A stretch of 64,000 nt of DNA from the sequence record LR745208.1. The stretch is one strand, 5' to 3'. The notes under the pieces were generated by a model. That model had not been told where the DNA came from. It saw nothing but the letters and a program-made list of their open reading frames with translations, and did not search any database. Shown piece by piece: positions 13,539 to 25,991 of the stretch (position 1 is the first letter of the stretch; each line of letters opens with the position of its first letter). The position numbers and the translations under genes were made by a program.

Positions 13539-15104
13539 CTACTTGGAGGCAGGGATGGGTGCCCACTTCGATATCACATCCATGACGGCAACGACGTGTT
13601 TGCAGGTACGCTTCACACCCTCAGGGTCCCTGACCACGGGAACACTCGCCGTCCCCACGGGCTTCCCATAGAGGTACTCCTCTACCTTGGAGTGATGTTC
13701 TGGACCCTGCCACCGAGAGAAGTTGCAGGAGCAGGACAACTCCAGGTCCATCTTTGACAGGCTCCGGATCCCCTTGGCGGATAGGGTTCCCTTGACCCTG
13801 ACAATGTACTTCTCACCCTTGCTGCCTGGGACCTGGAACCGGAACATGAGATTGCCGGGGTCAGAACGTATCAGCTTGGGGACTTTGACCTTGGCCCGAT
13901 CAATCACCCCGGGGTCCAGACCATTGAGGATCTCCGACATCCTGGCCGCCACCCTGATAGCCGCAACCACCCTATCCGCAGAGGCTTCCTTGTTGGCAAA
14001 GTCATGTCCAGAAGGAATAACCTTGGCAGACCCCGGATTGTTGTCTACTTCTCGGATATTATCCATCTCTTCGGATGGGATACGGTCGAAGTGATCCGAG
14101 TCAGGATATTTGAGGATAGGAGAGTATGGGGAGGGAGCCCCTAGGTCCCTGACGCCATCCCCCGGGTCCATGTTGTATCCAGGAGTGAATGTCTCCCTGT
14201 AGAACGTTCCAGCCACTCTTGTAGGGTCTACCTCGTCCTCGAAGTCGGCATCAGCCCACTCAAAAAATGTGTCCAAATCCGTCTCCGAGTCAAACTCCAC
14301 ATCATTCAAAAAGGCAAAGAAGGGCACCTCGCCTAGGCCCAACCCCTCCGATTGGATCACCACATTCTGTTCTTGAACCGCCAACACAACCCCGGACCCG
14401 AAATCCGGATGCCAGAAGGGCAACTCCACAGATGCGGTCTTGTCCCGTTGCTTCTTAGCCCGGTCTGCATTGCTCCGGAACCCACCCGCTGGCAGCCGGT
14501 TGAACTTCTTGCCAATGTCCACGTTGTTCCGCATCTTGCGGACCCTCTTGAACAATGAGTTGGAACGCACCTTGTGGTAATGCTTCTTAGCCCGGGTCTT
14601 GATCTGACCCCGGTGACGGAGGTAATATTTCTGGTGGTACCGCTTTGCTTCCCCCATCTGACGTTTCTGTCTCTTGGAGTAGGTGGGAGGCCTCGTAACC
14701 TCTACAGAATTGGCCTCTCGAACCCCGGCCCCGCTACCATCCCCAGGACTACTATTGTTGTCATCCGTACGGCGAGGAGTAATATTGGTCTTGAATGGGT
14801 GTCCGTAATCCTCCCCAGGTGTACCCGGCGTTCGGACATGAACCTTCTGTCCCTCACCTGACGGGCCAGGGGTGTTATATCCCCAGTTCCCTGGAATGTC
14901 TCTCTCCAGGTTCTCTTTTGTGTCTGTTCGTTGGGGCCTGACGCGACTCCTATCAGACTTGGGGGACTCCCCAGGTGGGTGGCTGATCGAGTCCCCAGAC
15001 GGGGCCTGGATGCCTTTCCCAGGCTTCTCACTCACGAACGTGCGGACACCAGTAAGCTCCTCTACAGGGGCTCGGTAGGCTTCCTTATCGCGTTGGAGGG
15101 CCAT
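13539..15104 (-). CDS. multidomain protein with a basic Arg/Lys tract and a C-terminal SWIM zinc finger
   Basis: LSCSC...CKHVVAV (SWIM CxCx(n)CxH); central KRQKRQ...HRGQIKTRAKKHYHKVR tract. Confidence 0.65.
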   Translation of the reverse strand: MALQRDKEAYRAPVEELTGVRTFVSEKPGKGIQAPSGDSISHPPGESPKSDRSRVRPQRTDTKENLERDIPGNWGYNTPGPSGEGQKVHVRTPGTPGEDYGHPFKTNITPRRTDDNNSSPGDGSGAGVREANSVEVTRPPTYSKRQKRQMGEAKRYHQKYYLRHRGQIKTRAKKHYHKVRSNSLFKRVRKMRNNVDIGKKFNRLPAGGFRSNADRAKKQRDKTASVELPFWHPDFGSGVVLAVQEQNVVIQSEGLGLGEVPFFAFLNDVEFDSETDLDTFFEWADADFEDEVDPTRVAGTFYRETFTPGYNMDPGDGVRDLGAPSPYSPILKYPDSDHFDRIPSEEMDNIREVDNNPGSAKVIPSGHDFANKEASADRVVAAIRVAARMSEILNGLDPGVIDRAKVKVPKLIRSDPGNLMFRFQVPGSKGEKYIVRVKGTLSAKGIRSLSKMDLELSCSCNFSRWQGPEHHSKVEEYLYGKPVGTASVPVVRDPEGVKRTCKHVVAVMDVISKWAPIPASK

Positions 15105-15109
15105 GCCTG

Positions 15110-15676
15110 TTAGATCCCAACATTGGTCTGCACGTATGCGTAACCATTGGATAATGTGCTGGGGGGCAAAGCACAGATCCCAAAATACAGGAACCGCACC
15201 GTAATGGGGGTCCCGTCTGGAAACAGCCCACCCGCATTGACTGCGGGATCCGATTCATCCTGATTGGTCAAGAGACCGTTTTCCGACACATACAAGAACT
15301 GCTGTACTGAGTAGACCAGAGGCACCAATGGGCCCCCCCCATGGCGAGAGGCATAAGTGTATCGCTCATAGGAGGTGGTGGCCAGGAAGTTTCCACCAAA
15401 GTACAGGGACACTGTGCGGCTTCGCACATTTGTCTGTGTGATTGCCGTGTACTGGTCCCCAGACTCATTCGACCCGAAGGGCAGGAACCCACAGTAGGTA
15501 CCGTTGGCAAGATCCACTCCGGGCTCCCCTGTCCCGTCATCCACCCAACGCACAAAAGCTCCCCCCACCCAGCCTCTGGTCGCCAGAGTGGCTGAAATCT
15601 TGATGGGCATCGTGTCCCCCTTGTGGAACAGGACGCAATCCCGATTGTTGTACCCACTGAGGTTTGTGATACTCAT
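15110..15676 (-). CDS. putative capsid-associated protein
   Basis: 188-aa Gly-rich beta ORF with ATGA coupling to the upstream gene. Confidence 0.6.
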   Translation of the reverse strand: MSITNLSGYNNRDCVLFHKGDTMPIKISATLATRGWVGGAFVRWVDDGTGEPGVDLANGTYCGFLPFGSNESGDQYTAITQTNVRSRTVSLYFGGNFLATTSYERYTYASRHGGGPLVPLVYSVQQFLYVSENGLLTNQDESDPAVNAGGLFPDGTPITVRFLYFGICALPPSTLSNGYAYVQTNVGI

Positions 15677-16407
15677 CGAGGGGCCTTAGCCTTTGGCAAG
15701 TCATCCCGGCTCTGGGGAAGCCCCCCGTCTCCGGGTTCATGTGTCATGATGAGATGCCTATTTAGAGTGCTGAAGGTGCCCCCCCCAGGTCCAGCTTTGA
15801 TCTCTGAGGGGGTAGGCGGAGCTTTTCTGGCTTGCTGTGTAGCCTTGGGCACCGAGATGTCCGCATTCTGCATCTCTTGAACTGACTTCCCAGCCGTTCC
15901 TGGCACGTTGGAAAGAGCCTTGGTTTGGGCAAACTCCCGCGTCTCCCGCTTCTTGGGATTGTCAAAAAAGTGGCCCTCAGCACTTGTGGCCCCCGAAGCC
16001 TCCAGGACCCTATGTACGGCCTGAGCCTCAAGGAATCGCTTGGCCACCCGTGATGGCAAAGATTCCTTCGTCCTCTTGTCCGATGAATATGGATGGACTT
16101 TCATGCTCTCGTCCACAACATATCGGTCCTCAATTGGAAGTCTCCCACGCAGGAACTCTTCCCCCATCACCACAAGGGCATAGGCGGTTCGGTCCAGTGC
16201 CCGTTCTACCTCTGTGAGCCTCTCAGGAAACCCAATAATCAGGTCCCCAGCTACTTGCCACAGATGGTCCTTCTTGTCCGATGTTTCCACCAGCTCCAAG
16301 GCCCTATCCAGCATAAGCCGGAGACGATGCATATCAACACGGGCCTGGGTCACCCCCTCAGTGAGTAGGGCCCAGGATGCCTGACTGGAAGCGATCTTGT
16401 GAGACAT
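15673..16407 (-). CDS. hypothetical protein
   Basis: 244 aa; contains PSRVAKRF. Confidence 0.7.
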   Translation of the reverse strand: MSHKIASSQASWALLTEGVTQARVDMHRLRLMLDRALELVETSDKKDHLWQVAGDLIIGFPERLTEVERALDRTAYALVVMGEEFLRGRLPIEDRYVVDESMKVHPYSSDKRTKESLPSRVAKRFLEAQAVHRVLEASGATSAEGHFFDNPKKRETREFAQTKALSNVPGTAGKSVQEMQNADISVPKATQQARKAPPTPSEIKAGPGGGTFSTLNRHLIMTHEPGDGGLPQSRDDLPKAKAPR

Positions 16408-16449: not shown

Positions 16450-17532
16450 TCACCGGGGAGGGAAAGCGAGAGCCTCGTCGATTCCCCTGACAACTGAGGG
16501 GACCTCGTAGCTCTTGATTAGGGCCAAAACATCTGGGCTGTTCCGATATTGGTCCACCGCAATCTTAACCCGTGACTTCCAATGGATCTTCTTGTCCCAC
16601 CGGATCCCAGGGGCAATCTCCAGGCTGTCTCCGTTGATTACCACGTCCTCCACCGAAGTTGGGGCCTTAGCCACTACCTTGACCGCTGCGGCCACTGGCT
16701 TTGCTACCTTAACGACCGGCGTGGCAACAGATGGGGTCGACGCAGCCACCTGCTTCTTGCGCTGGATAGCCAACATTTGTGCATGGGTCGCTGGGTCCAC
16801 AGCATCCAGGATCTCCTCCACCGAATCTGCCGCCGCTGCGACGATCCCCCCCTTAGATGCCAGCAGGTCAGCCTTAGGACCTGCCTGAGGACGGATAACC
16901 TTGGCTGGTGGTGCCAGATGCTCCACTACACCCGTCACGTCCTCTGTGGGCTCTCCAGCGTTCATGCTGGTTGAGCCATCCATGCTGAAACTCGTCTTGG
17001 ATGCCCTCTTGAGCTTTGCCACCGGGGTCCCCTCCGATGATGGGGTCGGGCTGGATGCAGTAACCTTTGGCTTGATCGCCTGACCAACCGTTCGGCCGTC
17101 CCCCTCGGTATCCTTGACCAGGGATGAGTTGAATGTCTTGCCCTTGAGAGTGAGCCCCTCTGAGGTTGTGGTCACTTCCGCAGCCTTCTTGACCGCCCCC
17201 GCCTTGGTGGCTGGGCCCACATAGGTCTCCTCACCCGATACAGTCGTAGGGGATTGCTTGACCTTCGTGGTATCCTGAGCTGGACGTACGGTAATCCCCG
17301 CAGAAACAGGAATGTAGTCCGACACACTGTCCCCTATGGGCACCAACCACCCAGCTTTGATGGTGGAGCGAATCTCTGGATAGGGATGCTCTTGGCCCGA
17401 GACCCGAAGGATCTGACCATCATATTGAACGACCTGCCCCTCGGGGATGTCTACCTGAAGACGCCCCAAATGGAACTTGACATTCGCCCGGAAGTCACGA
17501 AACGTCCCTGCAACTAGATTGATTTCACTCAT
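16450..17532 (-). CDS. hypothetical protein with a low-complexity Ala/Lys/Thr linker
   Basis: 360-aa ORF with a GGAG SD. Confidence 0.7.
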   Translation of the reverse strand: MSEINLVAGTFRDFRANVKFHLGRLQVDIPEGQVVQYDGQILRVSGQEHPYPEIRSTIKAGWLVPIGDSVSDYIPVSAGITVRPAQDTTKVKQSPTTVSGEETYVGPATKAGAVKKAAEVTTTSEGLTLKGKTFNSSLVKDTEGDGRTVGQAIKPKVTASSPTPSSEGTPVAKLKRASKTSFSMDGSTSMNAGEPTEDVTGVVEHLAPPAKVIRPQAGPKADLLASKGGIVAAAADSVEEILDAVDPATHAQMLAIQRKKQVAASTPSVATPVVKVAKPVAAAVKVVAKAPTSVEDVVINGDSLEIAPGIRWDKKIHWKSRVKIAVDQYRNSPDVLALIKSYEVPSVVRGIDEALAFPPR

Positions 17533-17582
17533 CGATGGTTCTCTCCTGATACGGTTGTACTGCTACCATACCAAGGAATTCA

Positions 17583-17879
17583 TCAATTGGGTTTTTCAGA
17601 ACTGGGCTTCTCGGGATCCTGAGGCCCCTCTGCCTCTTCCTCATCCGGGTCCAAAGTGGACAAGTCAATCCCATCCCCTTCGTCCACAGTCTCCACGATA
17701 TCATGGATATAGGCCATTAGGGCCAACCCTGCCCCATGCGTCACTGGCATTGGAGGGGCCGTACCGACGATAGAAATGGTCAACTGCTCCCCTACTGCCA
17801 CAATCGCCAATAGGGTCATGTCCCCGGACACCACCAGTTCCCTGATCTGGTCCAGTCGAGCAAGCATCTCATCTTTCAC
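17583..17879 (-). CDS. hypothetical protein
   Basis: 98 aa, GGAGG SD, acidic tail. Confidence 0.55.
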   Translation of the reverse strand: MKDEMLARLDQIRELVVSGDMTLLAIVAVGEQLTISIVGTAPPMPVTHGAGLALMAYIHDIVETVDEGDGIDLSTLDPDEEEAEGPQDPEKPSSEKPN

Positions 17880-17892
17880 CGGGAGACCTCCT

Positions 17893-18948
17893 TTATAGGC
17901 CTAGGGCCTCGCGGACTACCTCTGGCAACGTCTGCACGTCAAAATCAGGGTCATACGACTTCACATGATGCCACAAATCCTTGGCCTTCTTCACATCATG
18001 GTCCTCAACGATGTACTCCTGCATAAGACCCCCCACCATGTAGTCATATACTGCATTAGAGAGGTAATCCCGTGGTTCCGTGTCCATGCGGGACCAGATC
18101 CGATAAGCATCTGAAAACTTACCTCTCTTCAACAGGCTGAGCACGAGATCAAACCCAGAAGCATCCCCCTCCCTTGCTTCGTCCCCCTTCTTAGCTTCAG
18201 CCTGAAATTGAGTAATCACCTTCTGAAGCTGGGCCACCAACTTGGGAGGCATGACCATGCTGGCAAGCATCCTACGAGGGGCTGCCTCCACCACATTCTT
18301 GCCCGCCATGGTGATCTGTAGACCCGCCCCGGTGACCTTGACCAACCCCTTCTTGGCCAGCCCTTGGATCAAAGGATTCTGGGCACTATAGTCCCCAAGG
18401 TGGTTCCGCTGGAAGTATTCCTTCCGGGCCTTGGGAATCAGGCTGCTCATGATCTGAAGTGCAGTGACCTCTTGCTCCGAGTGGGCATCACCCTCACCTG
18501 CGGGGAGGAGTTTCTGGAGGTTGTCCGGGTGGGCTGCAATGGTTGCGTAAACCGAATGACCCCCCTCTGTGCCAGAGATCACAGCCCCATTAAGAGGAAT
18601 TGGGTATTCCTTTCGGTCCATGTCTACCTGATTCTGTGGAGAGAAAGGATTGGCACCACCCCAAGAGCCATACTCAACCTTGGTACGCCCCGAAGTCAGA
18701 TCCACAACCGCCGTGAACCCCCGCATCCCATCCCCACCAGCCCGCTGGACCCCATAGGTGGTCTTGCCCACAACCATGATGTCCCGCTTCCCATAACCCA
18801 CTTCCTTCAAAGCGCGGATCAATGCCTGGGGCAGGCTCCTGACCTCCATGTACTGGCCAGCAGCCTCCTTGAGGAGGGGGAGGAGATGAGGCCTAAGGCT
18901 TGGATCGGAATGGGCTAGCCGAATGAGCTTGGAACGAAGGGTCGTCAT
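17893..18948 (-). CDS. putative internal head protein carrying the MTTLRSKLIRLAH leader
   Basis: N-terminal MTTLRSKLIRLAHSDPSLRPHLLPLLKEAA is shared with three other proteins in the window. Confidence 0.7.
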   Translation of the reverse strand: MTTLRSKLIRLAHSDPSLRPHLLPLLKEAAGQYMEVRSLPQALIRALKEVGYGKRDIMVVGKTTYGVQRAGGDGMRGFTAVVDLTSGRTKVEYGSWGGANPFSPQNQVDMDRKEYPIPLNGAVISGTEGGHSVYATIAAHPDNLQKLLPAGEGDAHSEQEVTALQIMSSLIPKARKEYFQRNHLGDYSAQNPLIQGLAKKGLVKVTGAGLQITMAGKNVVEAAPRRMLASMVMPPKLVAQLQKVITQFQAEAKKGDEAREGDASGFDLVLSLLKRGKFSDAYRIWSRMDTEPRDYLSNAVYDYMVGGLMQEYIVEDHDVKKAKDLWHHVKSYDPDFDVQTLPEVVREALGL

Positions 18949-19054
18949 ACCAGGGGACCTGGATAGCCCAAATAAAACAGGGCCACAAATGTGGCCCCTG
19001 GCGACGAATCCAATTGAAATGGATGCCCTTCCCTGTTACGGGACGCGCTGCGGG

Positions 19055-19570
19055 CTACTGTGGAGAGGGGATAGGGAAATCAGGGCCCTTCCTGATCCCA
19101 ACCAATAGAGGCTCCAAATCTGGGTGGGCTTGTCTCTGACATTCCTCCGCAAGGTAGGGGTACTTCTCGGCGATTGCCTCAAATATCCTGCCCCGAATCT
19201 CACGGTTGGCTGGCATCATTGACGCCCACCTTCCCGACATTTCCATTAAGGAATCCGTCGTACTTGGTCATACGATGTCGAATGAAGTTCACCTGAATCC
19301 GTTCCAGAAAAGCAGGATCACCACTCAATTTCGCAGGTTGCCAATCATAATTGGCTCGTTCCATGGCCCGGTCTTGGTGAAAGCTATTGTAGCTCTGAAT
19401 GGCCCTCCGAAGCAATTGATCCCGAGTCACCTCCCCCACTCGGATCACAACCACTTGTCTGGCTCCCCCAAGAACTTGATTACCAAAGACTTGGTCCAGC
19501 CCCGCTCAACCAACGAGGAAAAGGTGATGTGAGGCTCTCTGGGAGGCGGGGGCTCCCTACTCTTCTTCAT
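19055..19570 (-). pseudogene. fragmented conserved phage protein (three frames)
   Basis: ERGWTKSLVIKFLGEPDK (frame 1), LLRRAIQSYN...DPAFLERIQVNFIRHRMTKYD...GKVG (frame 2) and EIRGRIFEAIAEKYPYLAEECQRQ (frame 3) look like collinear parts of one protein; breaks at about 19455 and 19210. Confidence 0.55.
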
Positions 19571-19901
19571 CCCCATCTTCCCCGTCCCCATCTTCGTCAA
19601 AACAGGTAAACTTGGACAGGATCTCATCCTGAACCAATCCTGCCAGCCCAGCAACAGGCCCGGTGACACTAATCATGTGACAATCAGCATCAACCTCAAT
19701 CCCAGGACACTCAACCGCGACTGCGGCTACCCGCCTCAACAACTTGGCCGTCCCCTCCAACATCTCCGCATGAGCCAGAAATGCCTCGGAGGGTGTTGTG
19801 GTAATGGTGAGGAAAAAGCCCAAGTCATCCCCCTGCTTGAAGTAGGGGAGCTGAAGCTCATAGGTCTCAATTGTCTTGGGTGGCTTGATCTTGGTTGTCA
19901 T
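19557..19901 (-). CDS. hypothetical protein
   Basis: 114 aa, GGAGG-like SD, acidic C-terminus. Confidence 0.6.
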   Translation of the reverse strand: MTTKIKPPKTIETYELQLPYFKQGDDLGFFLTITTTPSEAFLAHAEMLEGTAKLLRRVAAVAVECPGIEVDADCHMISVTGPVAGLAGLVQDEILSKFTCFDEDGDGEDGDEEE

Positions 19902-19926
19902 GGGGAGGTTACGCCATTTGATCGAG

Positions 19927-20528
19927 TTACCTGACCCAAACTACAAAAGGCGCCCGGACCTGTAGCATAAGGCGAACCTTGGTTCGCCCCCCCACGACTG
20001 GGGCACGAGTTAAGTATTCCCCCCTGGTAGGTACTGGAATTGTAGTCTCCCACCGTCCATCCTTGGTCCGGTACCAACCGAGTGGCCTTTCAATTGCCTC
20101 GTTCCGCCGCTCAATTGAAGTCACCACAAAGGCGCTAGCCAGAATGCCTTCCGCAGTGTGTCCTCGATGGTAACTGGTCATGCCAGGATCCGGCACATCC
20201 TGCCAAATCTGCATGTCCCCAGTGTAGTTTTTGCCCAAATAGGCACACCTCCATTCCCCATTGGGTCTACCGTCCCCGCCCCACAACAAATCACGGAGCA
20301 CCCATCTTGACCGCTTCGCTGCAACTCCTCCCGCCATTGCACAACCCGTTCCCTTCGGGCCGGAGCGAATGACCACAGGGTGAATCCATATTGTTCAATG
20401 TCCCTACGTTTCCGCTCAACTATCCCATCCAGTGTCTCACCAGCATGGGGCCCAACAGGAGACCAGAAACAGATGGCCCCCCCATTGGAAAGTGGCTTTG
20501 CAGCAGGAATCAAAAGGGAGTGGGTCAT
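19927..20528 (-). pseudogene. hypothetical gene with a single frameshift at an A5 run (20228-20232)
   Basis: Starts MTHSLL with an ATGA overlap on the 1229-aa gene. ...GGVPIWAK continues as NYTGDMQIWQD only in the -1 frame. Confidence 0.55.
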
Positions 20529-23500
20529 GAAAACAAATCCAGGACCGAAGAGTCCGGGTCCTCCTGGAGAGTTACACTCTTGGGCACATCCTTGACCTTT
20601 GGGGCCCCATTCTGGCACCCATCACAATATCGGCGGGTGTTGTTCTCGGAATCGTCCCGATAGGTACTGCCACAGCCCCTACATGCCTTGCTCCTGGCCT
20701 TGTCTCGACAGGTGGGGCACCGATTCACCATCTCCCCCTCACCCAGGACAAACCCCTCCTTACACAGAATGCAGGTTCGATTCCCCGTTGTTCGGTCCGC
20801 CCGAAAGTATGACTCATCCTTGGCCTTCCCTGACCGAAACATCTTCTCCCGCCTGCCACACTCTGGAGTACAGAACTTAGAGCAATTCTTGGAGCTGAGG
20901 TCAATGAAATCCTTCCCACAATTCCGGTAGGCACACTGCTTGGTCTTCTGTTGGATTTCCTTCACCTGCTTACATGTAGGGCACTTCGTGAACCTTCCCG
21001 GCGCCTCCGTCTCCCACGGCTTATGGCAGGTCAAGCAAACAAACGTACGCGCCTGACTAACAGGTGTGATCACCCGAACAGCATCCCTCTTCTGCTTGGC
21101 CCTCTCCGCATCCACCCGAAGCTTGCAGATCCTACAACGCCTTCCCTCACGGTCGGGACCCTCTAGAGCTAGGCCACAATCCATGCAGTGGGGTCCAGCA
21201 AGCCTGCAGGGGGCACAATATCCGCCTACCAAGTCACCAGATGGTATGGAACCCCCACACTTTTGACATCTGGATATGACCGGGACAAGTATCCCTTCAG
21301 GGACTCCCCCCTCGGATGGTACCAGCTCTGATGGTACAGGTGGGGCGGGCATGGTGTGTCCCACAGTGGGGATTCCAGTATTGACCCCGGCCCCAATGGA
21401 TACCCAACACAACACCAATTCATGATTGTCTGGTTGGGTAGGAGTTGGCATTGCATATTTAAGGATCTCTCTGGGGTTCCCCAACCCAGCTTGAGCAACC
21501 AGTCGTTTTGTGTCCTCAATGAGAGGGTACTGGACTTTCTCAATAAAGAAGTCGTCCACATTCAACACCAACCAGCCCCCCTGTTTGAGGCCATAAACTG
21601 CCTTCTGAATTACCGGACCCCAGAACCCCTTGAGCCACTTCTCATAGGTAGGGTATCGGACACTGGACTGGGTAGGCTCCGTCCCATAGACTTCCCGGCA
21701 CCAATATGGTGGGGATGTTAGGACCATATCCAAGCTCTGTGGAGTCACATCAAAATCCTCAGCGGGTAGATTGTGGAGTTCCACCTGTGCCCCAATCCCA
21801 TAGGAATTGACCCAGTCCCGTAAATGGTGAAGTCTGGTAAATGTTTCCGACTGTGGCTCACAGGCAATGTATTTGGGCATTGACTTGGACATCGTGGACC
21901 CAAGCAATCTCCCCCCATACCCTGCGCAGGGGTCCCATAAGGTTCCCCCTGGAGGGCAGAACCGATCTACTAGCACCTTTGCTGCTGAGGGACGGAAGTT
22001 ATACACCCCAGATCGCCAATAGAATCTCAGCCTTCCCCTAAGGTTAGCAGCGGTGGGCATGTCCCCCGAGGACAAAATCGAGGCTAATACCTTTCGAAGC
22101 ATACCCTCATCCTGAAACAGGTCCCAAGGACTCATTGTGGAGCCATACGACCGTGCCTTCCAAATATGAGTGGAGAATGCCTGACAGGATGCCTGCCCCA
22201 CTTGTCTTCTCTTTAGACAACCATCCTGAAGGATATGCCTCTCCTCCAAATCCCGGAGAATGTGGAGTTCCTCAGGCCTCGCAACATGATACGGGAATCC
22301 CTGTTTTCTCCAATGGGATTCCAACTCGACAAGCAGCCCTGCCTGATCCGTTTCAGATAGGGATTTCCACATCTGGCACCTATCTTTAACAGCATCCCAG
22401 AAAGATAACTTTTCCGGGGCTCCTTTATCCACTTGTGGAAGCATCCCCATGGGATGATGGTGTCCGGGGAGCTTGTGAAGCATATCCGGAGTCACAAACT
22501 CTCTCACCAACGCAAAGAACTTGTCGGCGGTTGCCGCCCGGATTGTAAGTTGTGGGCAAGAGGAGTCGATGCTACTTGGTTTCAAGTAGGTGTCCAGCCC
22601 AAACCTCTCCCCCACCCACCGCACCACATCCTCAGCTTGGTCCTTGGAGATATCCCCCAGAGCAAATGATGGGTTGTCTCCCAGGTGCCCATCGTCAAAG
22701 TACCAGTAAGCCAGAGATCTAGGTGTCAAAGACCGGATTACATGCTCAGGAAACACCTTCACCCCATCGGGGTAGAACAACTCCCGCATCTCCTTCAGCC
22801 AAACATGTTGAACCGTTAGAAACCCAAACGTAAAGGCTAGGGTACCATTGGGCATCTTCTTTTCCCCGTAGAAGAGGGGAAGGGCGTGGGGGGTCAAAAT
22901 GCTGTGGATCCTCCTAAGGTAGGTGAGCTGGTAATGAGTATGGGTGAGCCTACACTTGCCCCTCTCAGTCACATGAGCATCCCCAAGTAATGTGCCAATT
23001 AGAGTCTCCTTCTGCTCCTCGGTCCACTCCGTATGCTTCGTTGCTCGATCTGACTTCGAGATTGACCTGATTCCCCACCCCAATCTTCGATTGCGTATTG
23101 TTGGTTTCGTCACCCCATACAGTTTTGCAATGGTCCGGTCACCTGCCTGTTGGTATAAGTCTGCCAGGATTACCGGAGTCAACTCCTCTACGGGAAGGCA
23201 CCCAACGGGGGCACCCACCCGATGATGAGCAGACGGAATCCCCCACTTCTTTCGGTGGTAGGCAATTGCCACCCCACTCACCCCATAGAGTGCCCCAATC
23301 TCAATATCCGTTTTGGTGGCATACAAATCCCGGAGAGTTTCTTCAGTTAATCCTCGCCGGGCAGGTGCCCCGTGATTTGTGGGGGATACCTTTGTGACCA
23401 CCCCATACAAACGCTGTGCCTCTATTTGAGTGATAGGGCTGGCGACCACAGATGTGTCTGGCATTCTCCCCAACATACAGGAGGGTACAGCGTTTTGTAA

Positions 23501-24214
23501 TGTGCCTAGGAAATGGTTGGCTTGCTCCGGAAATTGAATGTGTGCCCCACTTGAGTTCTCCTGAAACTGTGGGTACAACCCAAGCTTATGACAAGCCTGA
23601 CTCAACACGTTCATTGTGGACTGATCGGGGCTTTTGTCAACGGAAATTCTCGGATCCCCTGTTAATGTGATGCCTCCCCTATCCAAGAACCACACGGCCA
23701 GAGACATTGGGTCCAACTCCAAGGAGGGAGGCACTACCAATACCCCCGCTGGGTAGAACTGATCGTAGTAGGGTCTCAACTGTGGGCAACCCCGTGTCGC
23801 CATCTGAAAACTACAATATAACCTGCCATTTTTCTTTGACCTGACTTCGTGAACCTCTTGCTTCACATATGGCCCCAGCATTTCCGCCTTCCACCGAATA
23901 TAACCCTCTTCGTTAATGGGATGACGCACCACCAACTTCGCCCCCCCACCCAGGGGGGTCATGTACCCATTTCCGAGCAGGCACCCGATCAATATGCCGT
24001 GTTGCTCAGGGGTTATCGGAGGCAGAACCCCCCCTGCTCGCTCTGCCCTTGTCAAAGTTGGGATTCCCCACCTCTTTCGCAGTTTCCCTACCTGGGGCTG
24101 AGTAAGCCCATACCGATTGGCAATGGCCACCTCGGAAAGACCCTGTGTCACATAGAGATCGGATAGGACATCCGCACTGAGTTGGAGAGGTTGGGGAAGT
24201 GATTCGGTAGTCAT
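20525..24214 (-). CDS. HTH x3 + LAGLIDADG x2 + amino-methyltransferase (SPPY, likely m4C) + Cys-rich Zn-finger fusion
   Basis: LIGCLLGNG/SLAVWFLDRG; LIGTLLGDA/SLAYWYFDDG; WDPCAGYGG (motif I); LTSPPYW (motif IV); more than eight CxxC pairs at the C-terminus. Confidence 0.8.
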   Translation of the reverse strand: MTTESLPQPLQLSADVLSDLYVTQGLSEVAIANRYGLTQPQVGKLRKRWGIPTLTRAERAGGVLPPITPEQHGILIGCLLGNGYMTPLGGGAKLVVRHPINEEGYIRWKAEMLGPYVKQEVHEVRSKKNGRLYCSFQMATRGCPQLRPYYDQFYPAGVLVVPPSLELDPMSLAVWFLDRGGITLTGDPRISVDKSPDQSTMNVLSQACHKLGLYPQFQENSSGAHIQFPEQANHFLGTLQNAVPSCMLGRMPDTSVVASPITQIEAQRLYGVVTKVSPTNHGAPARRGLTEETLRDLYATKTDIEIGALYGVSGVAIAYHRKKWGIPSAHHRVGAPVGCLPVEELTPVILADLYQQAGDRTIAKLYGVTKPTIRNRRLGWGIRSISKSDRATKHTEWTEEQKETLIGTLLGDAHVTERGKCRLTHTHYQLTYLRRIHSILTPHALPLFYGEKKMPNGTLAFTFGFLTVQHVWLKEMRELFYPDGVKVFPEHVIRSLTPRSLAYWYFDDGHLGDNPSFALGDISKDQAEDVVRWVGERFGLDTYLKPSSIDSSCPQLTIRAATADKFFALVREFVTPDMLHKLPGHHHPMGMLPQVDKGAPEKLSFWDAVKDRCQMWKSLSETDQAGLLVELESHWRKQGFPYHVARPEELHILRDLEERHILQDGCLKRRQVGQASCQAFSTHIWKARSYGSTMSPWDLFQDEGMLRKVLASILSSGDMPTAANLRGRLRFYWRSGVYNFRPSAAKVLVDRFCPPGGTLWDPCAGYGGRLLGSTMSKSMPKYIACEPQSETFTRLHHLRDWVNSYGIGAQVELHNLPAEDFDVTPQSLDMVLTSPPYWCREVYGTEPTQSSVRYPTYEKWLKGFWGPVIQKAVYGLKQGGWLVLNVDDFFIEKVQYPLIEDTKRLVAQAGLGNPREILKYAMPTPTQPDNHELVLCWVSIGAGVNTGIPTVGHTMPAPPVPSELVPSEGGVPEGILVPVISRCQKCGGSIPSGDLVGGYCAPCRLAGPHCMDCGLALEGPDREGRRCRICKLRVDAERAKQKRDAVRVITPVSQARTFVCLTCHKPWETEAPGRFTKCPTCKQVKEIQQKTKQCAYRNCGKDFIDLSSKNCSKFCTPECGRREKMFRSGKAKDESYFRADRTTGNRTCILCKEGFVLGEGEMVNRCPTCRDKARSKACRGCGSTYRDDSENNTRRYCDGCQNGAPKVKDVPKSVTLQEDPDSSVLDLFS

Positions 24215-24344
24215 ATATCATGTTACCCACAAACTGTGCACGACTGGCACAAATCGACAGGGAACCTACGATTTATACCCCAAGGGTGTATGACTGGATT
24301 TAGGCCCCAGCCCACCGAAGGCCAAGGAACAATAGGAAAGAGAT

Positions 24345-24412
24345 AAATGAGCGAAGGGCTCGAATCTCTTTCGAGACCCAAGCCCCTCAACTGGTTGAAA
24401 CCGTTGCAGTTT
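24345..24412 (-). terminator. hairpins downstream of the major capsid gene (probable terminator)
   Basis: GAAAC-N7-GTTTC and GGGCT...TCTC-GAAA-GAGA...AGCCC, followed by a T/C-rich run. Confidence 0.5.
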
Positions 24413-24417
24413 CTAGA

Positions 24418-25293
24418 TCAGCGAGTGATCGTGAGGCGGGTCAGACCACGGGGGTTGTAAGCTCCGATACCTAGGTTTTCAAACACCGAGAATCCGATGG
24501 TGCGTGCCTTGGGATCGTCTGCTGACAAAACTGTCAATTCCGTGCGTACGGGAATACGTCCAAACATTTCGGGCTCACAGGTACAATAGATTGTACCTGC
24601 TGGCACGAGACGTGAGGTGATGACCTGAGCGCCCCAGAGTGTCGCCTGGAGACCAGTCTTGAGCAGGGTTGCCTGAGACTCGATATCCAGAATGTCGCGG
24701 CCGAACTTACGGACGTCCGCGTAGTCACGCGCGTTCATGAACACGCGGGCAACCCGAAGGTCGTGGCGTTCAATGAGCGAGAATGCGTCGGCGAGGACCG
24801 CACCATTGACTGGTGCAACCACGGGCACGTCAGGGTTCGTCCCGCCAGGAAGCGAGTCGAAGCCGTTGACTGCAATGGCGTCCATGACTGCGAAGACGCG
24901 TTCGTCTTCTGCGGCCTGGATCATCGCGCGGGCCAGATCCTGGGCGCGCTCGATCAGATCGAAACGACGCTCCTTGATCTGGGTCAGAGGAATCTCGGGG
25001 TTCGATGCAATCTCGAACAGCGGGAAGATTACCCTGCGTGGCTTGGTGATTGCGAGAATGTTCTCACCCTCTTCACCGACCACGTATGCGGTCACATCCG
25101 GGTCCTTGTCATAGATGGGCAGTGCCCCATCTGGCAGTTGCTCCACGAGGAAGGTCTTGCGACCAACGCTCATGTAGTCACGGCGTGTGCGGAGGGGCTG
25201 CGTCATCGACGCGGCGAGCTTGTTACGGCCAGCGGCGGTCTTGATGTAGTCCGAAATGATCTTCTGCTTGAGTGCGTTGTCTACGGTTGTCAT
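24418..25293 (-). CDS. major capsid protein, HK97/encapsulin-like fold
   Basis: 291 aa with highly biased codons; E-loop-like VVGEEGE...RRVIFPLFEIASNPEIPL; spine helix DLIERAQDLARAMIQAAEDERVF; A-domain RVFMNARDY...LWGAQVITSRLVP; located downstream of the protease and scaffold. Confidence 0.85.
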   Translation of the reverse strand: MTTVDNALKQKIISDYIKTAAGRNKLAASMTQPLRTRRDYMSVGRKTFLVEQLPDGALPIYDKDPDVTAYVVGEEGENILAITKPRRVIFPLFEIASNPEIPLTQIKERRFDLIERAQDLARAMIQAAEDERVFAVMDAIAVNGFDSLPGGTNPDVPVVAPVNGAVLADAFSLIERHDLRVARVFMNARDYADVRKFGRDILDIESQATLLKTGLQATLWGAQVITSRLVPAGTIYCTCEPEMFGRIPVRTELTVLSADDPKARTIGFSVFENLGIGAYNPRGLTRLTITR

Positions 25294-25304
25294 TGGAGTT
25301 CTCC

Positions 25305-25991
25305 TCAGATCCTCTGGTCAAAGACGATTTCAGACATCGCCGAATCAGGTGCGACCTTGAGGATACCAATGGTCGTTGCCGCAACGGCACCGGCATTGAT
25401 GCTCTCTAGCGTGTTGAAACCACCGCCGACGTCGACGATGATCCAAGCTGCGCCGTTCCACACGTACGTTGGCATGAGCCAGCCGTTTTGTGATGCTGCG
25501 AGCTTCAGACCCGCGAGGTATGTGAGTGCGGTACCCGCCGCAACACCACCCGTGGTGACGAGGAGCTGGGTCTCATAGAGACGGCTGCCGTACGTGCCCA
25601 TGGCGCTGACATAGGGACCCTTGCCAGACGCCGCCGCTGGAAGGTTCTCGTAAGCATTGCCCGAGGCGTTGTTGATGAACATACCCACTGGGAGGATATG
25701 GGTCGCAGCTACTGGAGCTACGAGACCTGCCGCAAGGTGCGGTCCGCCAACGGAGTTGTTACCTGCGTCTGGGCGCGCAAACGCCACAGAGCCAGAGAGC
25801 ACACCGAGAACTTCGGTAAGTGCGCCGGGCGAGGTAGATACTGTTCCGACTGTCGATACGATTGGCGGATTGGTCTGCGTGAAAGCATCGGCCGAGAGAA
25901 CGCTGATGGTGTTACGAACACCAACATGCAGAATCCTCAGTGCCGAAGAACTCTCCGTAAAACCACCGCTCGCCTGTCCAAGCAAAGCCAT
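25305..25991 (-). CDS. capsid decoration/cement protein
   Basis: Lies immediately upstream of the MCP; Gly/Ala-rich beta protein (PVGMFINNA...GKGPYV...IGILKVAP); AGGAG SD. Confidence 0.65.
   Translation of the reverse strand: MALLGQASGGFTESSSALRILHVGVRNTISVLSADAFTQTNPPIVSTVGTVSTSPGALTEVLGVLSGSVAFARPDAGNNSVGGPHLAAGLVAPVAATHILPVGMFINNASGNAYENLPAAASGKGPYVSAMGTYGSRLYETQLLVTTGGVAAGTALTYLAGLKLAASQNGWLMPTYVWNGAAWIIVDVGGGFNTLESINAGAVAATTIGILKVAPDSAMSEIVFDQRI

What the first reader, a model, noticed from the sequence alone, without database searches (positions are those of the whole stretch)
20525..24214. 1229-aa HTH-LAGLIDADG(dead)-HTH-HTH-LAGLIDADG(intact)-methyltransferase-Zn-finger fusion directly downstream of the capsid gene
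Seen: three DLY...YG...WGI HTH repeats. The first LAGLIDADG domain has GNG and DRG in place of the catalytic acids; the second retains GDA and DDG. Then follow DPCAGYGG/SPPY methyltransferase motifs and a long CxxC array. Known: SPPY typifies N4-cytosine methyltransferases, and LAGLIDADG domains recognise long sites. Inferred: either a self-protecting homing endonuclease (nuclease plus methyltransferase in one chain, like type IIG restriction enzymes) or a methyltransferase steered to long sites by LAGLIDADG readers. I found no intein splice junctions around the LAGLIDADG domains.
Basis: partly seen in the sequence, partly recalled or inferred. Interest (0 to 1): 0.68.

Follow-up and report, generated by a model that had tools for sequence, protein, structure and literature searches.

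The report
LAGLIDADG nuclease–DNA methyltransferase fusion beside capsid gene
A huge groundwater phage carries, right after its capsid gene, one real 1229-residue gene that joins a dead and an intact I-SceI-like homing nuclease to a DNA methyltransferase and zinc fingers; it belongs to a previously undescribed family that always sits at this site and may act as a one-chain cut-and-protect (restriction-modification-like) selfish module.

Summary
The 1229-aa ORF is real. It assembles identically in several groundwater runs, and a 40%-identical phage protein (P0005) has the same architecture.

It has two parts:
- Unit 1 is an HTH-LAGLIDADG unit whose two catalytic acids are replaced (GNG, DRG).
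- The "type A" core has two HTHs, an I-SceI-like LAGLIDADG domain with both catalytic Asp intact, a helical domain, a class-I SAM methyltransferase and a CxxC/CGNR zinc array. The methyltransferase is related to N6/N4 DNA methylases (PF01555) but has motif I before TSPPY.

At least 70 type A proteins exist in huge phages. In all 31 type A loci from IMG/VR, and all five looked up by exact protein, the gene lies 110-420 nt downstream of an unusually conserved capsid gene. That site is a hotspot that can be empty or hold free-standing, tandem or methyltransferase-fused LAGLIDADG genes. Methyltransferase relatives without LAGLIDADG mostly lie elsewhere. Unit 1 comes from a different hotspot lineage, so it is a fusion and not an internal duplication.

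No intein, intron or chimera was found. My best reading, at about 0.45, is a bifunctional homing nuclease plus DNA methyltransferase with restriction-modification-like logic. A reader-only methyltransferase and a methyltransferase carried as cargo remain open. Activity, target and methylated base are untested.

The parts
20525..24214 (-). Whole 1229-aa ORF (P0001): HTH, dead LAGLIDADG, HTH, HTH, intact LAGLIDADG, helical domain, methyltransferase, Zn array
   Evidence: Assembled identically in contigs of several runs, with no alternative joints.
24047..24175 (-). HTH1 (residues 14-56), part of unit 1
   Evidence: Repeat seen. Aligns with the N-terminal HTH of the other hotspot LAGLIDADG ORFs. 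phrog_12058 E 2.8e-13.
23519..23995 (-). LAGLIDADG domain 1 (residues 74-232), with both catalytic acids lost: LLGNG at 23966-23980 and FLDRGG at 23672-23689
   Evidence: PF03161 66.9 bits. The only unit of 19 with N and R at these positions. No PDB sequence match.
23237..23344 (-). HTH2 (residues 291-326); the conserved type A core begins here
23069..23176 (-). HTH3 (residues 347-382)
   Evidence: HTH_23 weak match at 351-376. Conserved in family alignment A2.
22463..23017 (-). LAGLIDADG domain 2 (residues 400-584), I-SceI-like, with catalytic Asp intact: LLGDA at 22976-22990 and YFDDGH at 22685-22702
   Evidence: PF03161 74.5 bits. I-SceI by phmmer E 2.7e-14, with LGDA and DDG aligned. Foldseek I-SceI TM 0.74, rmsd 2.3-2.7 A. 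The Asp residues are near-invariant in the family.
22010..22402 (-). Helical domain before the methyltransferase (residues 605-735), conserved and of unknown role (a possible target-recognition or docking domain)
   Evidence: AF2 pLDDT above 95, all-helical. Conserved GFP...RPEE...QVGQ..C motifs.
21380..22009 (-). Class-I SAM methyltransferase core (residues 736-945): motif X/I NFRP...DPCAGYGG (motif I at 21911-21934), then motif IV TSPPY (21704-21718)
   Evidence: AF2 pLDDT 92. Rossmann methyltransferase fold, Z 15-18. PF01555 21.9 bits, below the cut-off. Family profile against 2zie E 6.5e-12 and against DNA cytosine-N4 methyltransferases E 0.01. Relatives pass the PF01555 cut-off.
20615..21268 (-). 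Zinc-ribbon array (residues 983-1200): 10 CxxC pairs and a CGNR-type finger (20840-20941)
   Evidence: Cys columns invariant in A2. Model pLDDT 60-90.
24352..24389 (-). Terminator-like hairpin (17 pairs) between the capsid gene and the ORF
   Evidence: Equivalent hairpins follow the capsid stop codon in the related loci.
24418..25293 (-). Major capsid protein gene (291 aa); its stop codon is the left border of the variable island
   Evidence: phrog_2522 E 2e-47. 89-94% aa identity in 80 IMG/VR loci. Nucleotide homology stops at its stop codon.
17533..24417 (-). Variable island between the capsid gene and the next conserved backbone gene. It holds this ORF plus three small or unknown ORFs (19927-20376, 19557-19901, 17893-18948).
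   Evidence: In L072 the same two backbone genes are only 200 nt apart.
16450..17532 (-). First conserved backbone gene downstream (cluster c2, 360 aa); right border of the island
   Evidence: matches c2 in 18 loci. It is followed by c1 (15673-16407) and c3 (13539-15104).

Best explanation
The ORF is a genuine single gene of a 485-kb groundwater phage. It fuses two elements that colonise the same insertion hotspot immediately downstream of the capsid gene.

The C-terminal roughly 940 residues are a conserved "type A" protein. It contains two HTHs, an I-SceI-like monomeric LAGLIDADG endonuclease with an intact active site, a helical domain, a permuted PF01555-type amino-DNA methyltransferase (TSPPY, leaning towards N4-cytosine) and a zinc-ribbon/CGNR DNA-binding array. 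The N-terminal 285 residues are a catalytically dead HTH-LAGLIDADG unit from another lineage of hotspot homing-endonuclease genes. It is now either an extra DNA-binding module or a decaying passenger.

Proposed working (inferred, not shown):
1. The intact LAGLIDADG domain cuts a long site at or near the junction downstream of the capsid gene in related genomes that lack the element. This would happen during co-infection.
2. Repair from the element-bearing genome copies the gene in, or the competitor is simply damaged.
3. The fused methyltransferase marks the carrier's own DNA, so that packaged and replicating copies are spared.
This would be a one-chain module with restriction-modification-like self/non-self logic, built on a homing nuclease.

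Shown: the architecture, the intact motifs, the family, the fixed position and the hotspot polymorphism. Inferred: cleavage, the target, the methylated base, and any link between methylation and protection.
For: The gene is real. Contigs from several runs cover it with no differences or joints, and P0005 has the same architecture at 40% identity in other samples.

The nuclease looks active. It matches I-SceI with both catalytic Asp aligned and shares its fold at TM 0.74. LLGD[GA] and WYFDDG are kept in about 70 relatives. The LAGLIDADG domain is as conserved as the methyltransferase core, 0.63 against 0.65.

The methyltransferase motifs are invariant and the fold is confident. Its sequence kin are DNA methylases:
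- The family profile matches 2zie at E 6.5e-12 and DNA cytosine-N4 methyltransferases at E 0.01.
- Relatives pass the PF01555 cut-off.
- A 49%-identical relative is named site-specific DNA-methyltransferase, and many relatives are fused to ParB-like or HTH DNA-binding modules.

The site shows the marks of a mobile-element hotspot.
- All 31 type A loci and almost all LAGLIDADG+MT_B loci lie 134-420 nt after the capsid gene. Of 22 LAGLIDADG-free methyltransferase relatives, 18 have no capsid gene nearby.
- The site may be empty, or may hold free-standing, tandem or fused LAGLIDADG ORFs.
- L033 and L036 have 99.8% identical flanks and differ by a clean 1.1-kb LAGLIDADG insertion 16 nt after the capsid stop codon.
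- Type A needs at least 6 gains or losses for 9 occurrences on the capsid-gene tree.

Unit 1 is nearest to other hotspot LAGLIDADG genes (38-40% identity) and only 29% identical to unit 2.

The genome already has at least 5 ordinary PF01555 methylases and a Dam-like one, so this methyltransferase is not needed for general methylation.

Target methylation can block LAGLIDADG meganucleases (PMC3827243).
Against: No activity, target or methylated base has been tested.

Type A divergence tracks the phage backbone. Spearman correlation is 0.75 with the neighbouring scaffold-like gene, and mean identity is 50% against 55%. The gene is therefore mostly inherited vertically, which is equally what a domesticated, non-mobile gene would show.

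No near-identical pair of genomes with and without type A was found; the clean indel concerns a free-standing LAGLIDADG ORF.

No block of capsid-gene sequence separates carriers from non-carriers. One synonymous site was 9/9 against 0/28 in the first sample but only about 21/31 in the larger one.

The methyltransferase itself is below the PF01555 cut-off, and its nearest solved folds are tRNA m2G methyltransferases.

Fusion of this methyltransferase family to non-nuclease DNA binders (ParB-like, HTH, Zn) suggests a simple targeting role could suffice.
Confidence: 0.45

Rival explanations
1. Reader-only model. The protein is a DNA methyltransferase, and its HTH, LAGLIDADG and zinc modules serve only to bind long or specific DNA sites. 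Neither LAGLIDADG domain cuts. The position next to the capsid gene is historical, from an ancient homing-endonuclease insertion that was domesticated.
For: This methyltransferase family is repeatedly fused to DNA binders without nuclease function: ParB-like, DUF3102, and HTH plus Zn fingers. Unit 1 is plainly dead yet kept in frame. Type A co-diverges with the backbone. Precedent from my own knowledge, not tested here: WhiA is a LAGLIDADG scaffold turned DNA binder.
Against: Both catalytic Asp of domain 2 are kept in about 70 relatives spanning 37-57% identity. The one unit that has lost them (unit 1) shows that loss does happen when constraint lapses. LAGLIDADG-bearing forms of two different methyltransferase lineages, as well as methyltransferase-free LAGLIDADG ORFs, share one site. 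This points to site-specific insertion driven by the nuclease.
Confidence: 0.2
2. Cargo model. The LAGLIDADG part is an active homing endonuclease. The methyltransferase/Zn part is an independent anti-restriction (host-defence evasion) enzyme that hitch-hikes or pays for the element's persistence. Methylation has nothing to do with the nuclease's own target.
For: Same evidence for nuclease and methyltransferase integrity as in the best explanation. Huge phages of this clade carry many orphan methyltransferase paralogues: 3-7 copies in G002 and G005, and at least 6 methylases in this genome. This fits a general anti-restriction role. Modules are shuffled freely among MT_A, MT_B, Zn and LAGLIDADG.
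Against: The covalent fusion has been kept for a long time, with a confident compact model (pTM 0.73 over 944 residues). That is more than hitch-hiking requires. The genome already has ample methylases. No data distinguish this model from the self-protection version.
Confidence: 0.2
3. Virion-delivered protector. Because it is encoded in the head module, the protein is packaged and injected with the DNA, in the manner of P1 DarB (from my own knowledge). It would bind and methylate incoming DNA to evade host restriction.
For: The position directly after the capsid gene is invariant. The protein has many DNA-binding modules.
Against: A terminator-like hairpin separates it from the capsid gene. 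Many close relatives lack the gene altogether. No head-targeting signal or structural-protein similarity was found. The site also holds plain homing-endonuclease genes.
Confidence: 0.05
4. RNA methyltransferase. The catalytic domain methylates tRNA or rRNA (m2G-like), not DNA.
For: The nearest solved folds are Trm11, TrmN and Trm14 (Z 17-18). JGI named one relative Trm11.
Against: The Z-scores barely exceed those of generic Rossmann methyltransferases (14-16). No THUMP domain or other Pfam family matches the N-terminal part; the model there is all-helical. Sequence profiles match DNA methylases. The fusion partners are DNA binders.
Confidence: 0.04
5. Artefact, or intein-containing host protein. 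The ORF would be an assembly chimera, or the LAGLIDADG parts would be inteins spliced out of an HTH-methyltransferase protein.
For: None found. Inteins do occur in a nearby head-module gene of related phages.
Against: Contigs from several runs and studies are identical and show no alternative joints. The architecture is conserved in P0005 and in 70 type A proteins. No HINT or intein family matched at E<=1. The domains are of the I-SceI type that introns and free-standing genes encode.
Confidence: 0.01

Closest known systems
I-SceI / I-WcaI (monomeric LAGLIDADG_2 homing endonucleases)
   Same: Domain 2 aligns over the whole enzyme (E 2.7e-14, about 25% identity). Both catalytic Asp are in place and the fold matches (TM 0.74).
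   Different: I-SceI is an intron-encoded 235-aa enzyme. Here the domain is free-standing (no intron), is preceded by two HTHs, and is covalently joined to a methyltransferase and a Zn array. Cleavage is untested.
Free-standing homing endonuclease genes of T-even phages (Seg and Mob proteins; "intronless homing"), cited from my own knowledge
   Same: A gene inserted between conserved genes. It shows presence/absence and replacement polymorphism at one intergenic site next to a highly conserved gene.
   Different: Those enzymes are GIY-YIG or HNH and carry no methyltransferase. Type A here is long-lived and co-diverges with its phage.
Type IIG / IIC restriction-modification enzymes (such as MmeI and BpuSI), cited from my own knowledge
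   Same: Nuclease and DNA methyltransferase in one polypeptide.
   Different: Those enzymes use a PD-(D/E)XK nuclease, a gamma-class N6-adenine methyltransferase (NPPY) and a target-recognition domain reading short sites. This protein has a LAGLIDADG nuclease, a TSPPY methyltransferase and HTH/Zn readers. It is not a member.
PF01555 N6/N4 DNA methylases, including phage ParB-like-methyltransferase fusions
   Same: Motifs X/I and IV-VI are recognisably of this family. Stand-alone and ParB-fused relatives share 30-37% identity over 70-85% of the domain.
   Different: The motif order is I then IV, which is circularly permuted relative to the beta class. The query itself scores below the Pfam cut-off. 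The N-terminal partner is a LAGLIDADG nuclease instead of ParB.
WhiA (degenerate LAGLIDADG scaffold plus HTH, a transcription factor), cited from my own knowledge
   Same: Unit 1 is a LAGLIDADG scaffold without catalytic acids, joined to an HTH.
   Different: No WhiA Pfam family matched. The HTH is N-terminal. Unit 1's nearest kin are intact hotspot endonuclease genes.

Membership tests
LAGLIDADG_2 / I-SceI-type homing endonuclease (domain 2) | Pfam PF03161 score above the curated cut-off, covering both LAGLIDADG motifs in one chain | tested here: met
   74.5 bits against a cut-off of 25, profile positions 2-153 of 168
LAGLIDADG_2 / I-SceI-type homing endonuclease (domain 2) | Acidic catalytic residue at the end of each LAGLIDADG motif | tested here: met
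   LLGDA and YFDDGH align with LGDA and MDDG of I-SceI. Near-invariant in the family.
LAGLIDADG_2 / I-SceI-type homing endonuclease (domain 2) | Pseudo-dimeric alpha-beta-beta-alpha-beta-beta-alpha fold | tested here: met
   Foldseek: I-SceI TM 0.74-0.75, rmsd 2.3-2.7 A over 204 columns. Model pLDDT above 90.
LAGLIDADG_2 / I-SceI-type homing endonuclease (domain 2) | Site-specific double-strand cleavage of a long target | not testable with these tools
   Needs an enzyme assay
LAGLIDADG_2 homing endonuclease (domain 1) | Catalytic acids at the end of both motifs | tested here: not met
   GNG and DRG. The only one of 19 aligned units with these replacements. The fold family is still recognised (66.9 bits).
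Free-standing (mobile) homing endonuclease gene | Presence/absence polymorphism at a fixed site between otherwise near-identical genomes | tested here: inconclusive
   Met for the site and for a free-standing LAGLIDADG ORF (L033 and L036). For type A there is only a patchy distribution on the capsid tree, and its divergence tracks the backbone.
Free-standing (mobile) homing endonuclease gene | Constant insertion site next to a conserved target gene | tested here: met
   All 31 type A loci from IMG/VR and 5 of 5 looked up by exact protein lie 110-420 nt after the capsid gene
Intein | HINT splicing domain flanking the endonuclease; host protein continuous after excision | tested here: not met
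   No HINT, Intein_splicing or LAGLIDADG_3 match at E<=1. The domain is of the I-SceI type.
Group I intron-encoded endonuclease or maturase | ORF embedded in a group I intron | tested here: not met
   No Rfam family at gathering score in the 64-kb window. The ORF starts after the capsid stop codon and a terminator-like hairpin.
PF01555 N6/N4 DNA methylase (beta class) | Pfam score above the curated cut-off | tested here: not met
   The query scores 20.3-21.9 bits against 26.7. Relatives pass: P0003 66.6, P0069 71.8, L021 41.9, paralogues 28-33.5. The family profile matches 2zie at E 6.5e-12.
PF01555 N6/N4 DNA methylase (beta class) | Motif order IV...X-I (beta permutation) | tested here: not met
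   Motif I (761-768) precedes motif IV (833-837). The domain is a permuted relative.
PF01555 N6/N4 DNA methylase (beta class) | SAM-binding FxGxG-type motif I and (S/D)PP(Y/F) motif IV on a Rossmann-like fold | tested here: met
   D, P, C, G, GG of motif I and all of TSPPY are invariant columns. AF2 pLDDT 92, class-I methyltransferase fold, Z 15-18.
N4-cytosine DNA methyltransferase | Transfers methyl to N4 of cytosine (SPPY/F is typical but not exclusive) | not testable with these tools
   TSPPY is present in all relatives. The match to solved DNA cytosine-N4 methyltransferases is weak (E 0.01). A methylome is needed.
Type IIG/IIC restriction-modification enzyme | PD-(D/E)XK nuclease plus gamma-class N6A methyltransferase (NPPY) plus target-recognition domain in one chain | tested here: not met
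   The nuclease is LAGLIDADG and motif IV is TSPPY. PADLOC gives only weak MTase_II matches and homing-endonuclease models.
Trm11/TrmN m2G RNA methyltransferase | THUMP RNA-binding domain plus DPPY methyltransferase; family-level sequence match | tested here: not met
   The similarity is in fold only (Z 17-18, 13-16% identity). No THUMP or PF01170 match. The N-terminal domain is all-helical.
zf-CGNR zinc finger | Pfam PF11706 above the cut-off | tested here: met
   28.9 bits against 24, residues 1092-1125

The most novel reading that the evidence does not exclude
Type A proteins are the first restriction-modification-like enzymes built on a LAGLIDADG nuclease. A single chain cuts a long site in unmethylated genomes of competing related phages at the capsid-gene junction and methylates the same site (probably m4C) in its own genome. 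Methylation, rather than target-site divergence, would provide homing immunity, which would explain how the element persists next to a capsid gene too constrained to mutate.
Probability: 0.3. Interest if true: 0.8.

Novelty: new variant of a known kind. Interest (0 to 1): 0.6.

Why it matters
Homing endonucleases normally avoid cutting their own genome because insertion or sequence drift destroys the target. Restriction enzymes do it by methylation. No natural enzyme is known, to my knowledge or in the four literature searches run here, that joins a LAGLIDADG nuclease to a DNA methyltransferase.

If both halves are active and act on the same site, this family would bridge the two worlds. It would give a natural rare-cutting nuclease with a matched protecting methylase, which could be useful as a tool. 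It would also show how selfish nucleases shape competition between huge phages.

Even on the conservative reading, the locus documents a contested insertion hotspot next to an unusually conserved capsid gene, and module shuffling among LAGLIDADG, methyltransferase and zinc-finger parts.

Tried and rejected
1. Plus-strand reading of the given coordinates gives only stops. The gene is on the minus strand.
2. Intein: no HINT families matched. Rejected.
3. Group I intron or maturase: no Rfam hit in the window. Rejected.
4. Assembly chimera: contigs of four runs laid on 20300-25400 show no differences or joints. X9 and X10, from other studies, are fragmented by low depth but identical. Rejected.
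5. Internal tandem duplication of the HTH-LAGLIDADG unit: unit 1 is 29% identical to unit 2 but 38-40% identical to other hotspot genes. Rejected in favour of a fusion of two lineages.
6. Multi-copy element within the genome: there is only one copy of this methyltransferase and only these two LAGLIDADG domains in 485 kb.
7. Naming the methyltransferase substrate from structure: the Foldseek and VIA-align lists are generic Rossmann methyltransferases headed by tRNA m2G enzymes. This was not decisive.
8. NCBIfam gave nothing for any domain. Pfam and PADLOC gave nothing for the neighbouring ORFs.
9. Search for a target or immunity signature in the capsid gene: no 21-nt block separates carriers from empty sites. 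One synonymous site (Thr251 ACG) was 9/9 against 0/28, but phylogenetically independent pairs were too few (p 0.06-0.25). My first attempt at that test used the wrong alignment column and gave no information; one search is the corrected run. In the larger sample only about 21 of 31 carriers have the G. This is an enrichment only, not a determinant.
10. Rapid horizontal spread of type A: rejected as the main pattern, because identity tracks the backbone.
11. Literature: four searches found no description of a LAGLIDADG-methyltransferase fusion. This is absence in the held library only.
12. The costly whole-library protein search and the complex prediction were not used. The word search and family scans had already settled the questions they could answer.

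Full report
**What is there.** The coordinates hold one ATG-to-stop ORF of 1229 codons on the minus strand; the plus strand is full of stops. The window is 100% identical to a 485-kb "uncultured phage" record, LR745208.1. The gene immediately upstream, 24418-25293 (-), is a major head protein (phrog_2522, E 2e-47). A 203-nt spacer with a 17-bp terminator-like hairpin (24389-24352) separates the two genes.

**Domains.**
- Three HTH repeats of the DLY...YG...WGI kind lie at residues 19-51, 296-326 and 352-382.
- Two complete LAGLIDADG_2 domains score 66.9 and 74.5 bits against a cut-off of 25.
- A methyltransferase region carries DPCAGYGG (761-768) and TSPPY (833-837).
- Ten CxxC pairs and a CGNR-type finger occupy residues 983-1200.

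Domain 2 matches I-SceI by sequence (E 2.7e-14), and its LGDA and DDG motifs align with those of I-SceI. It also matches by predicted fold (TM 0.74, rmsd 2.3-2.7 A). Domain 1 has N and R at the two catalytic positions. Among 19 aligned LAGLIDADG units from this locus family it is the only one that does.

**The gene is not an artefact, an intein or an intron ORF.**
- Contigs from groundwater and soil runs of several studies cover the ORF and its junction with the capsid gene with no differences and no alternative joints. Some of these samples may be the source of the record.
- P0005, a 1230-aa protein from different samples, shares the full architecture at 40% identity.
- No HINT or intein family matches at E<=1.
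- No Rfam family reaches its gathering score anywhere in the window.

**A conserved family.** The word search returned 73 clusters. Most are proteins of 815-935 aa that cover the query from about residue 286 onward. Their architecture is HTH, HTH, LAGLIDADG, helical domain, methyltransferase, Zn array, and I call them "type A". LLGD[GA], WYFDDG, DPCAG[YW]GG and SPPY are almost invariant among them. The LAGLIDADG domain is as conserved as the methyltransferase core, with mean major-residue frequency 0.63 against 0.65. An AF2 model of residues 286-1229 is confident for a multidomain chain (pLDDT 87, pTM 0.73). Only the linker at model residues 658-688 and the last residues are disordered.

**The N-terminal unit is a second element fused on.** Residues 1-285 are 38-40% identical to LAGLIDADG genes found at the same locus in other phages (L018, L065) and 34% identical to the N-terminus of P0005. 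They are only 29% identical to the query's own unit 2. The 1229-aa protein is therefore an in-frame fusion of two homing-endonuclease lineages, and the upstream one has lost its active site. In P0005 the equivalent unit is still intact.

**The methyltransferase.**
- An AF2 model of residues 591-960 (pLDDT 92) shows an N-terminal helical domain followed by a class-I SAM methyltransferase fold.
- Structure searches return generic Rossmann methyltransferases headed by the tRNA m2G enzymes Trm11, TrmN and Trm14 (Z 17-18 against 14-16 for the rest). I do not consider this decisive.
- Sequence evidence points to DNA methylases of the PF01555 kind. The query itself is sub-threshold (21.9 against 26.7 bits). 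The family profile, however, matches the solved PF01555-type putative modification methylase 2zie at E 6.5e-12, and solved DNA cytosine-N4 methyltransferases at E 0.01.
- Relatives exceed the Pfam cut-off.
- A 49%-identical relative is named site-specific DNA-methyltransferase. Many 30-37%-identical stand-alone relatives are fused to ParB-like, DUF3102 or HTH modules.
- Motif I precedes motif IV, so the domain is circularly permuted relative to the beta class.
- TSPPY is kept in all relatives examined. This leans towards N4-cytosine, on established knowledge of motif IV, but it does not prove it.
- The phage also encodes at least five ordinary PF01555 methylases and a Dam-like enzyme, so this methyltransferase is not its only one.

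**The locus is a hotspot.** The 291-aa capsid protein is 89-94% identical in the 80 best IMG/VR loci, out of 490 relatives. Neighbouring genes are only 40-67% identical. Nucleotide similarity ends at the capsid stop codon, and each phage has its own hairpin just after it. Between the capsid gene and the next conserved genes (c2, c1 and c3; in the window 16450-17532, 15673-16407 and 13539-15104) the content varies widely:
- nothing (L072, where c2 starts 200 nt after the capsid gene);
- free-standing HTH-LAGLIDADG-HTH ORFs of 300-330 aa;
- two or three LAGLIDADG ORFs in tandem;
- LAGLIDADG fused to a second methyltransferase lineage ("type B", about 650 aa);
- a Zn-X-methyltransferase protein without LAGLIDADG (784 aa);
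- type A;
- unrelated ORFs.

L033 and L036 have flanks 99.8% identical and differ by a clean 1.1-kb LAGLIDADG ORF inserted 16 nt after the capsid stop codon. On a capsid-gene nucleotide tree, type A needs at least six gains or losses for nine occurrences.

**Position is tied to the LAGLIDADG part.** All 31 type A loci recovered from IMG/VR have the capsid gene directly upstream, with a gap of 149-418 nt. So do the five type A proteins looked up by exact sequence, including the most divergent (37% identity). Nearly all type B loci show the same arrangement. In contrast, 18 of 22 methyltransferase relatives without LAGLIDADG have no capsid gene within 2.5 kb. This is what a site-specific nuclease that directs or maintains insertion at this junction would produce.

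**Evidence for caution.** Pairwise identity of type A tracks the backbone. Spearman correlation is 0.75 with the scaffold-like gene and 0.74 with the capsid gene, and mean identity is 50% against 55%. Type A is therefore an old resident that mostly co-diverges with its phage. That fits homing among close kin, but it fits a domesticated gene equally well. I found no near-identical genome pair with and without type A.

I also found no capsid-gene block that separates carriers from non-carriers. One synonymous site looked perfect (9/9 against 0/28) in the first sample, but it fell to about 21/31 in a larger one and never reached significance in independent contrasts.

**Mechanism.** I rank the candidate mechanisms as follows.

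| Model | Probability |
|---|---|
| Bifunctional homing nuclease plus DNA methyltransferase with restriction-modification-like logic | 0.45 |
| Methyltransferase that uses the LAGLIDADG, HTH and Zn modules only as readers | 0.2 |
| Active homing-endonuclease gene carrying an unrelated anti-restriction methyltransferase as cargo | 0.2 |
| Virion-delivered protector | 0.05 |
| RNA methyltransferase | 0.04 |
| Artefact or intein | 0.01 |

In the favoured model, the intact I-SceI-like domain cuts element-free relatives at or near this junction, and the methyltransferase marks the carrier's DNA. Target methylation can block LAGLIDADG enzymes, as reported for engineered meganucleases (PMC3827243). 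Cleavage, the target site, the methylated base and the link between them are all inferences.

**Comparison with what is known.** The parts belong to known families: I-SceI-type LAGLIDADG, PF01555-related methyltransferase and the CGNR finger. The whole works most like a free-standing homing-endonuclease gene and, functionally, like a single-chain restriction-modification enzyme. It fails the defining features of type IIG enzymes, because its nuclease and methyltransferase are of other classes. Four full-text searches found no description of a natural LAGLIDADG-methyltransferase fusion; this is absence in the held library only. I rate it a new variant of a known kind, with interest 0.6.

Noticed in passing
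window 24418-25293 (-); loci L009-L088: The 291-aa major capsid protein is 89-94% identical across 80 huge-phage contigs (140-618 kb; 490 relatives in IMG/VR). Adjacent genes are only 40-67% identical. The constraint is unusually strong, with many synonymous changes.
   Followed up: partly
L033:6871-7991 compared with L036:6871-6927: A clean 1.1-kb insertion polymorphism of a free-standing HTH-LAGLIDADG-HTH ORF lies 16 nt after the capsid stop codon, in flanks that are 99.8% identical. The 13-nt string TCGCTGATCGCTG occurs at the capsid stop codon and again at the end of the insert. A second 1.7-kb indel lies further downstream (L033 10422-12147).
   Followed up: partly
P0003 and P0037 (1560 aa), P0069 (982 aa); L098:4001-8683: Longer relatives carry two methyltransferase domains (MT_A and MT_B). 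Between them are the Zn array and about 350 residues with no Pfam match. By eye these residues have PD-(D/E)XK-like D...D/E-x-K patterns. If so, this would be a second nuclease type in the same chain.
   Followed up: no
G005:C1:268581-295006 (L091, L092, L094, L096); G002 (L090, L093, L095): Related huge phages carry three to seven paralogous methyltransferases of about 400 aa from the same permuted TSPPY family. Six of them cluster within 12 kb in G005.
   Followed up: partly
L035:10083-11384; also cluster c7 in L057 and L075: A PAPS-reductase/DUF3440 gene, a kind linked to DNA modification, follows the tandem LAGLIDADG ORFs in the same hotspot.
   Followed up: no
L004:1-2501 and L098:1-1061: In related phages a large head-module gene (906-1104 aa) three genes upstream of the capsid gene carries HINT/intein domains. 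Inteins therefore do occur in this module, although not in the ORF studied.
   Followed up: no
G001 (the 485-kb genome): C1:201257-202996, 277243-281462, 421453-433155, 105251-106021: The phage encodes at least five canonical PF01555 methylases and one Dam-like methylase, but no C5-cytosine methylase (PF00145).
   Followed up: partly
window 17893-20376 (-): Three further ORFs in the variable island (149, 114 and 351 aa) have no Pfam, PHROG or PADLOC match. The 149-aa and 114-aa ORFs match nothing downstream of the capsid gene in the compared loci; the 351-aa ORF has only short, weak matches there.
   Followed up: partly
L099:4001-8879: One LAGLIDADG-methyltransferase relative (P0162, 630 aa) lies at a different locus. 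The gene just upstream encodes a 190-aa product rather than the ~291-aa capsid protein. A second, 702-aa HTH-LAGLIDADG protein lies two genes downstream.
   Followed up: no
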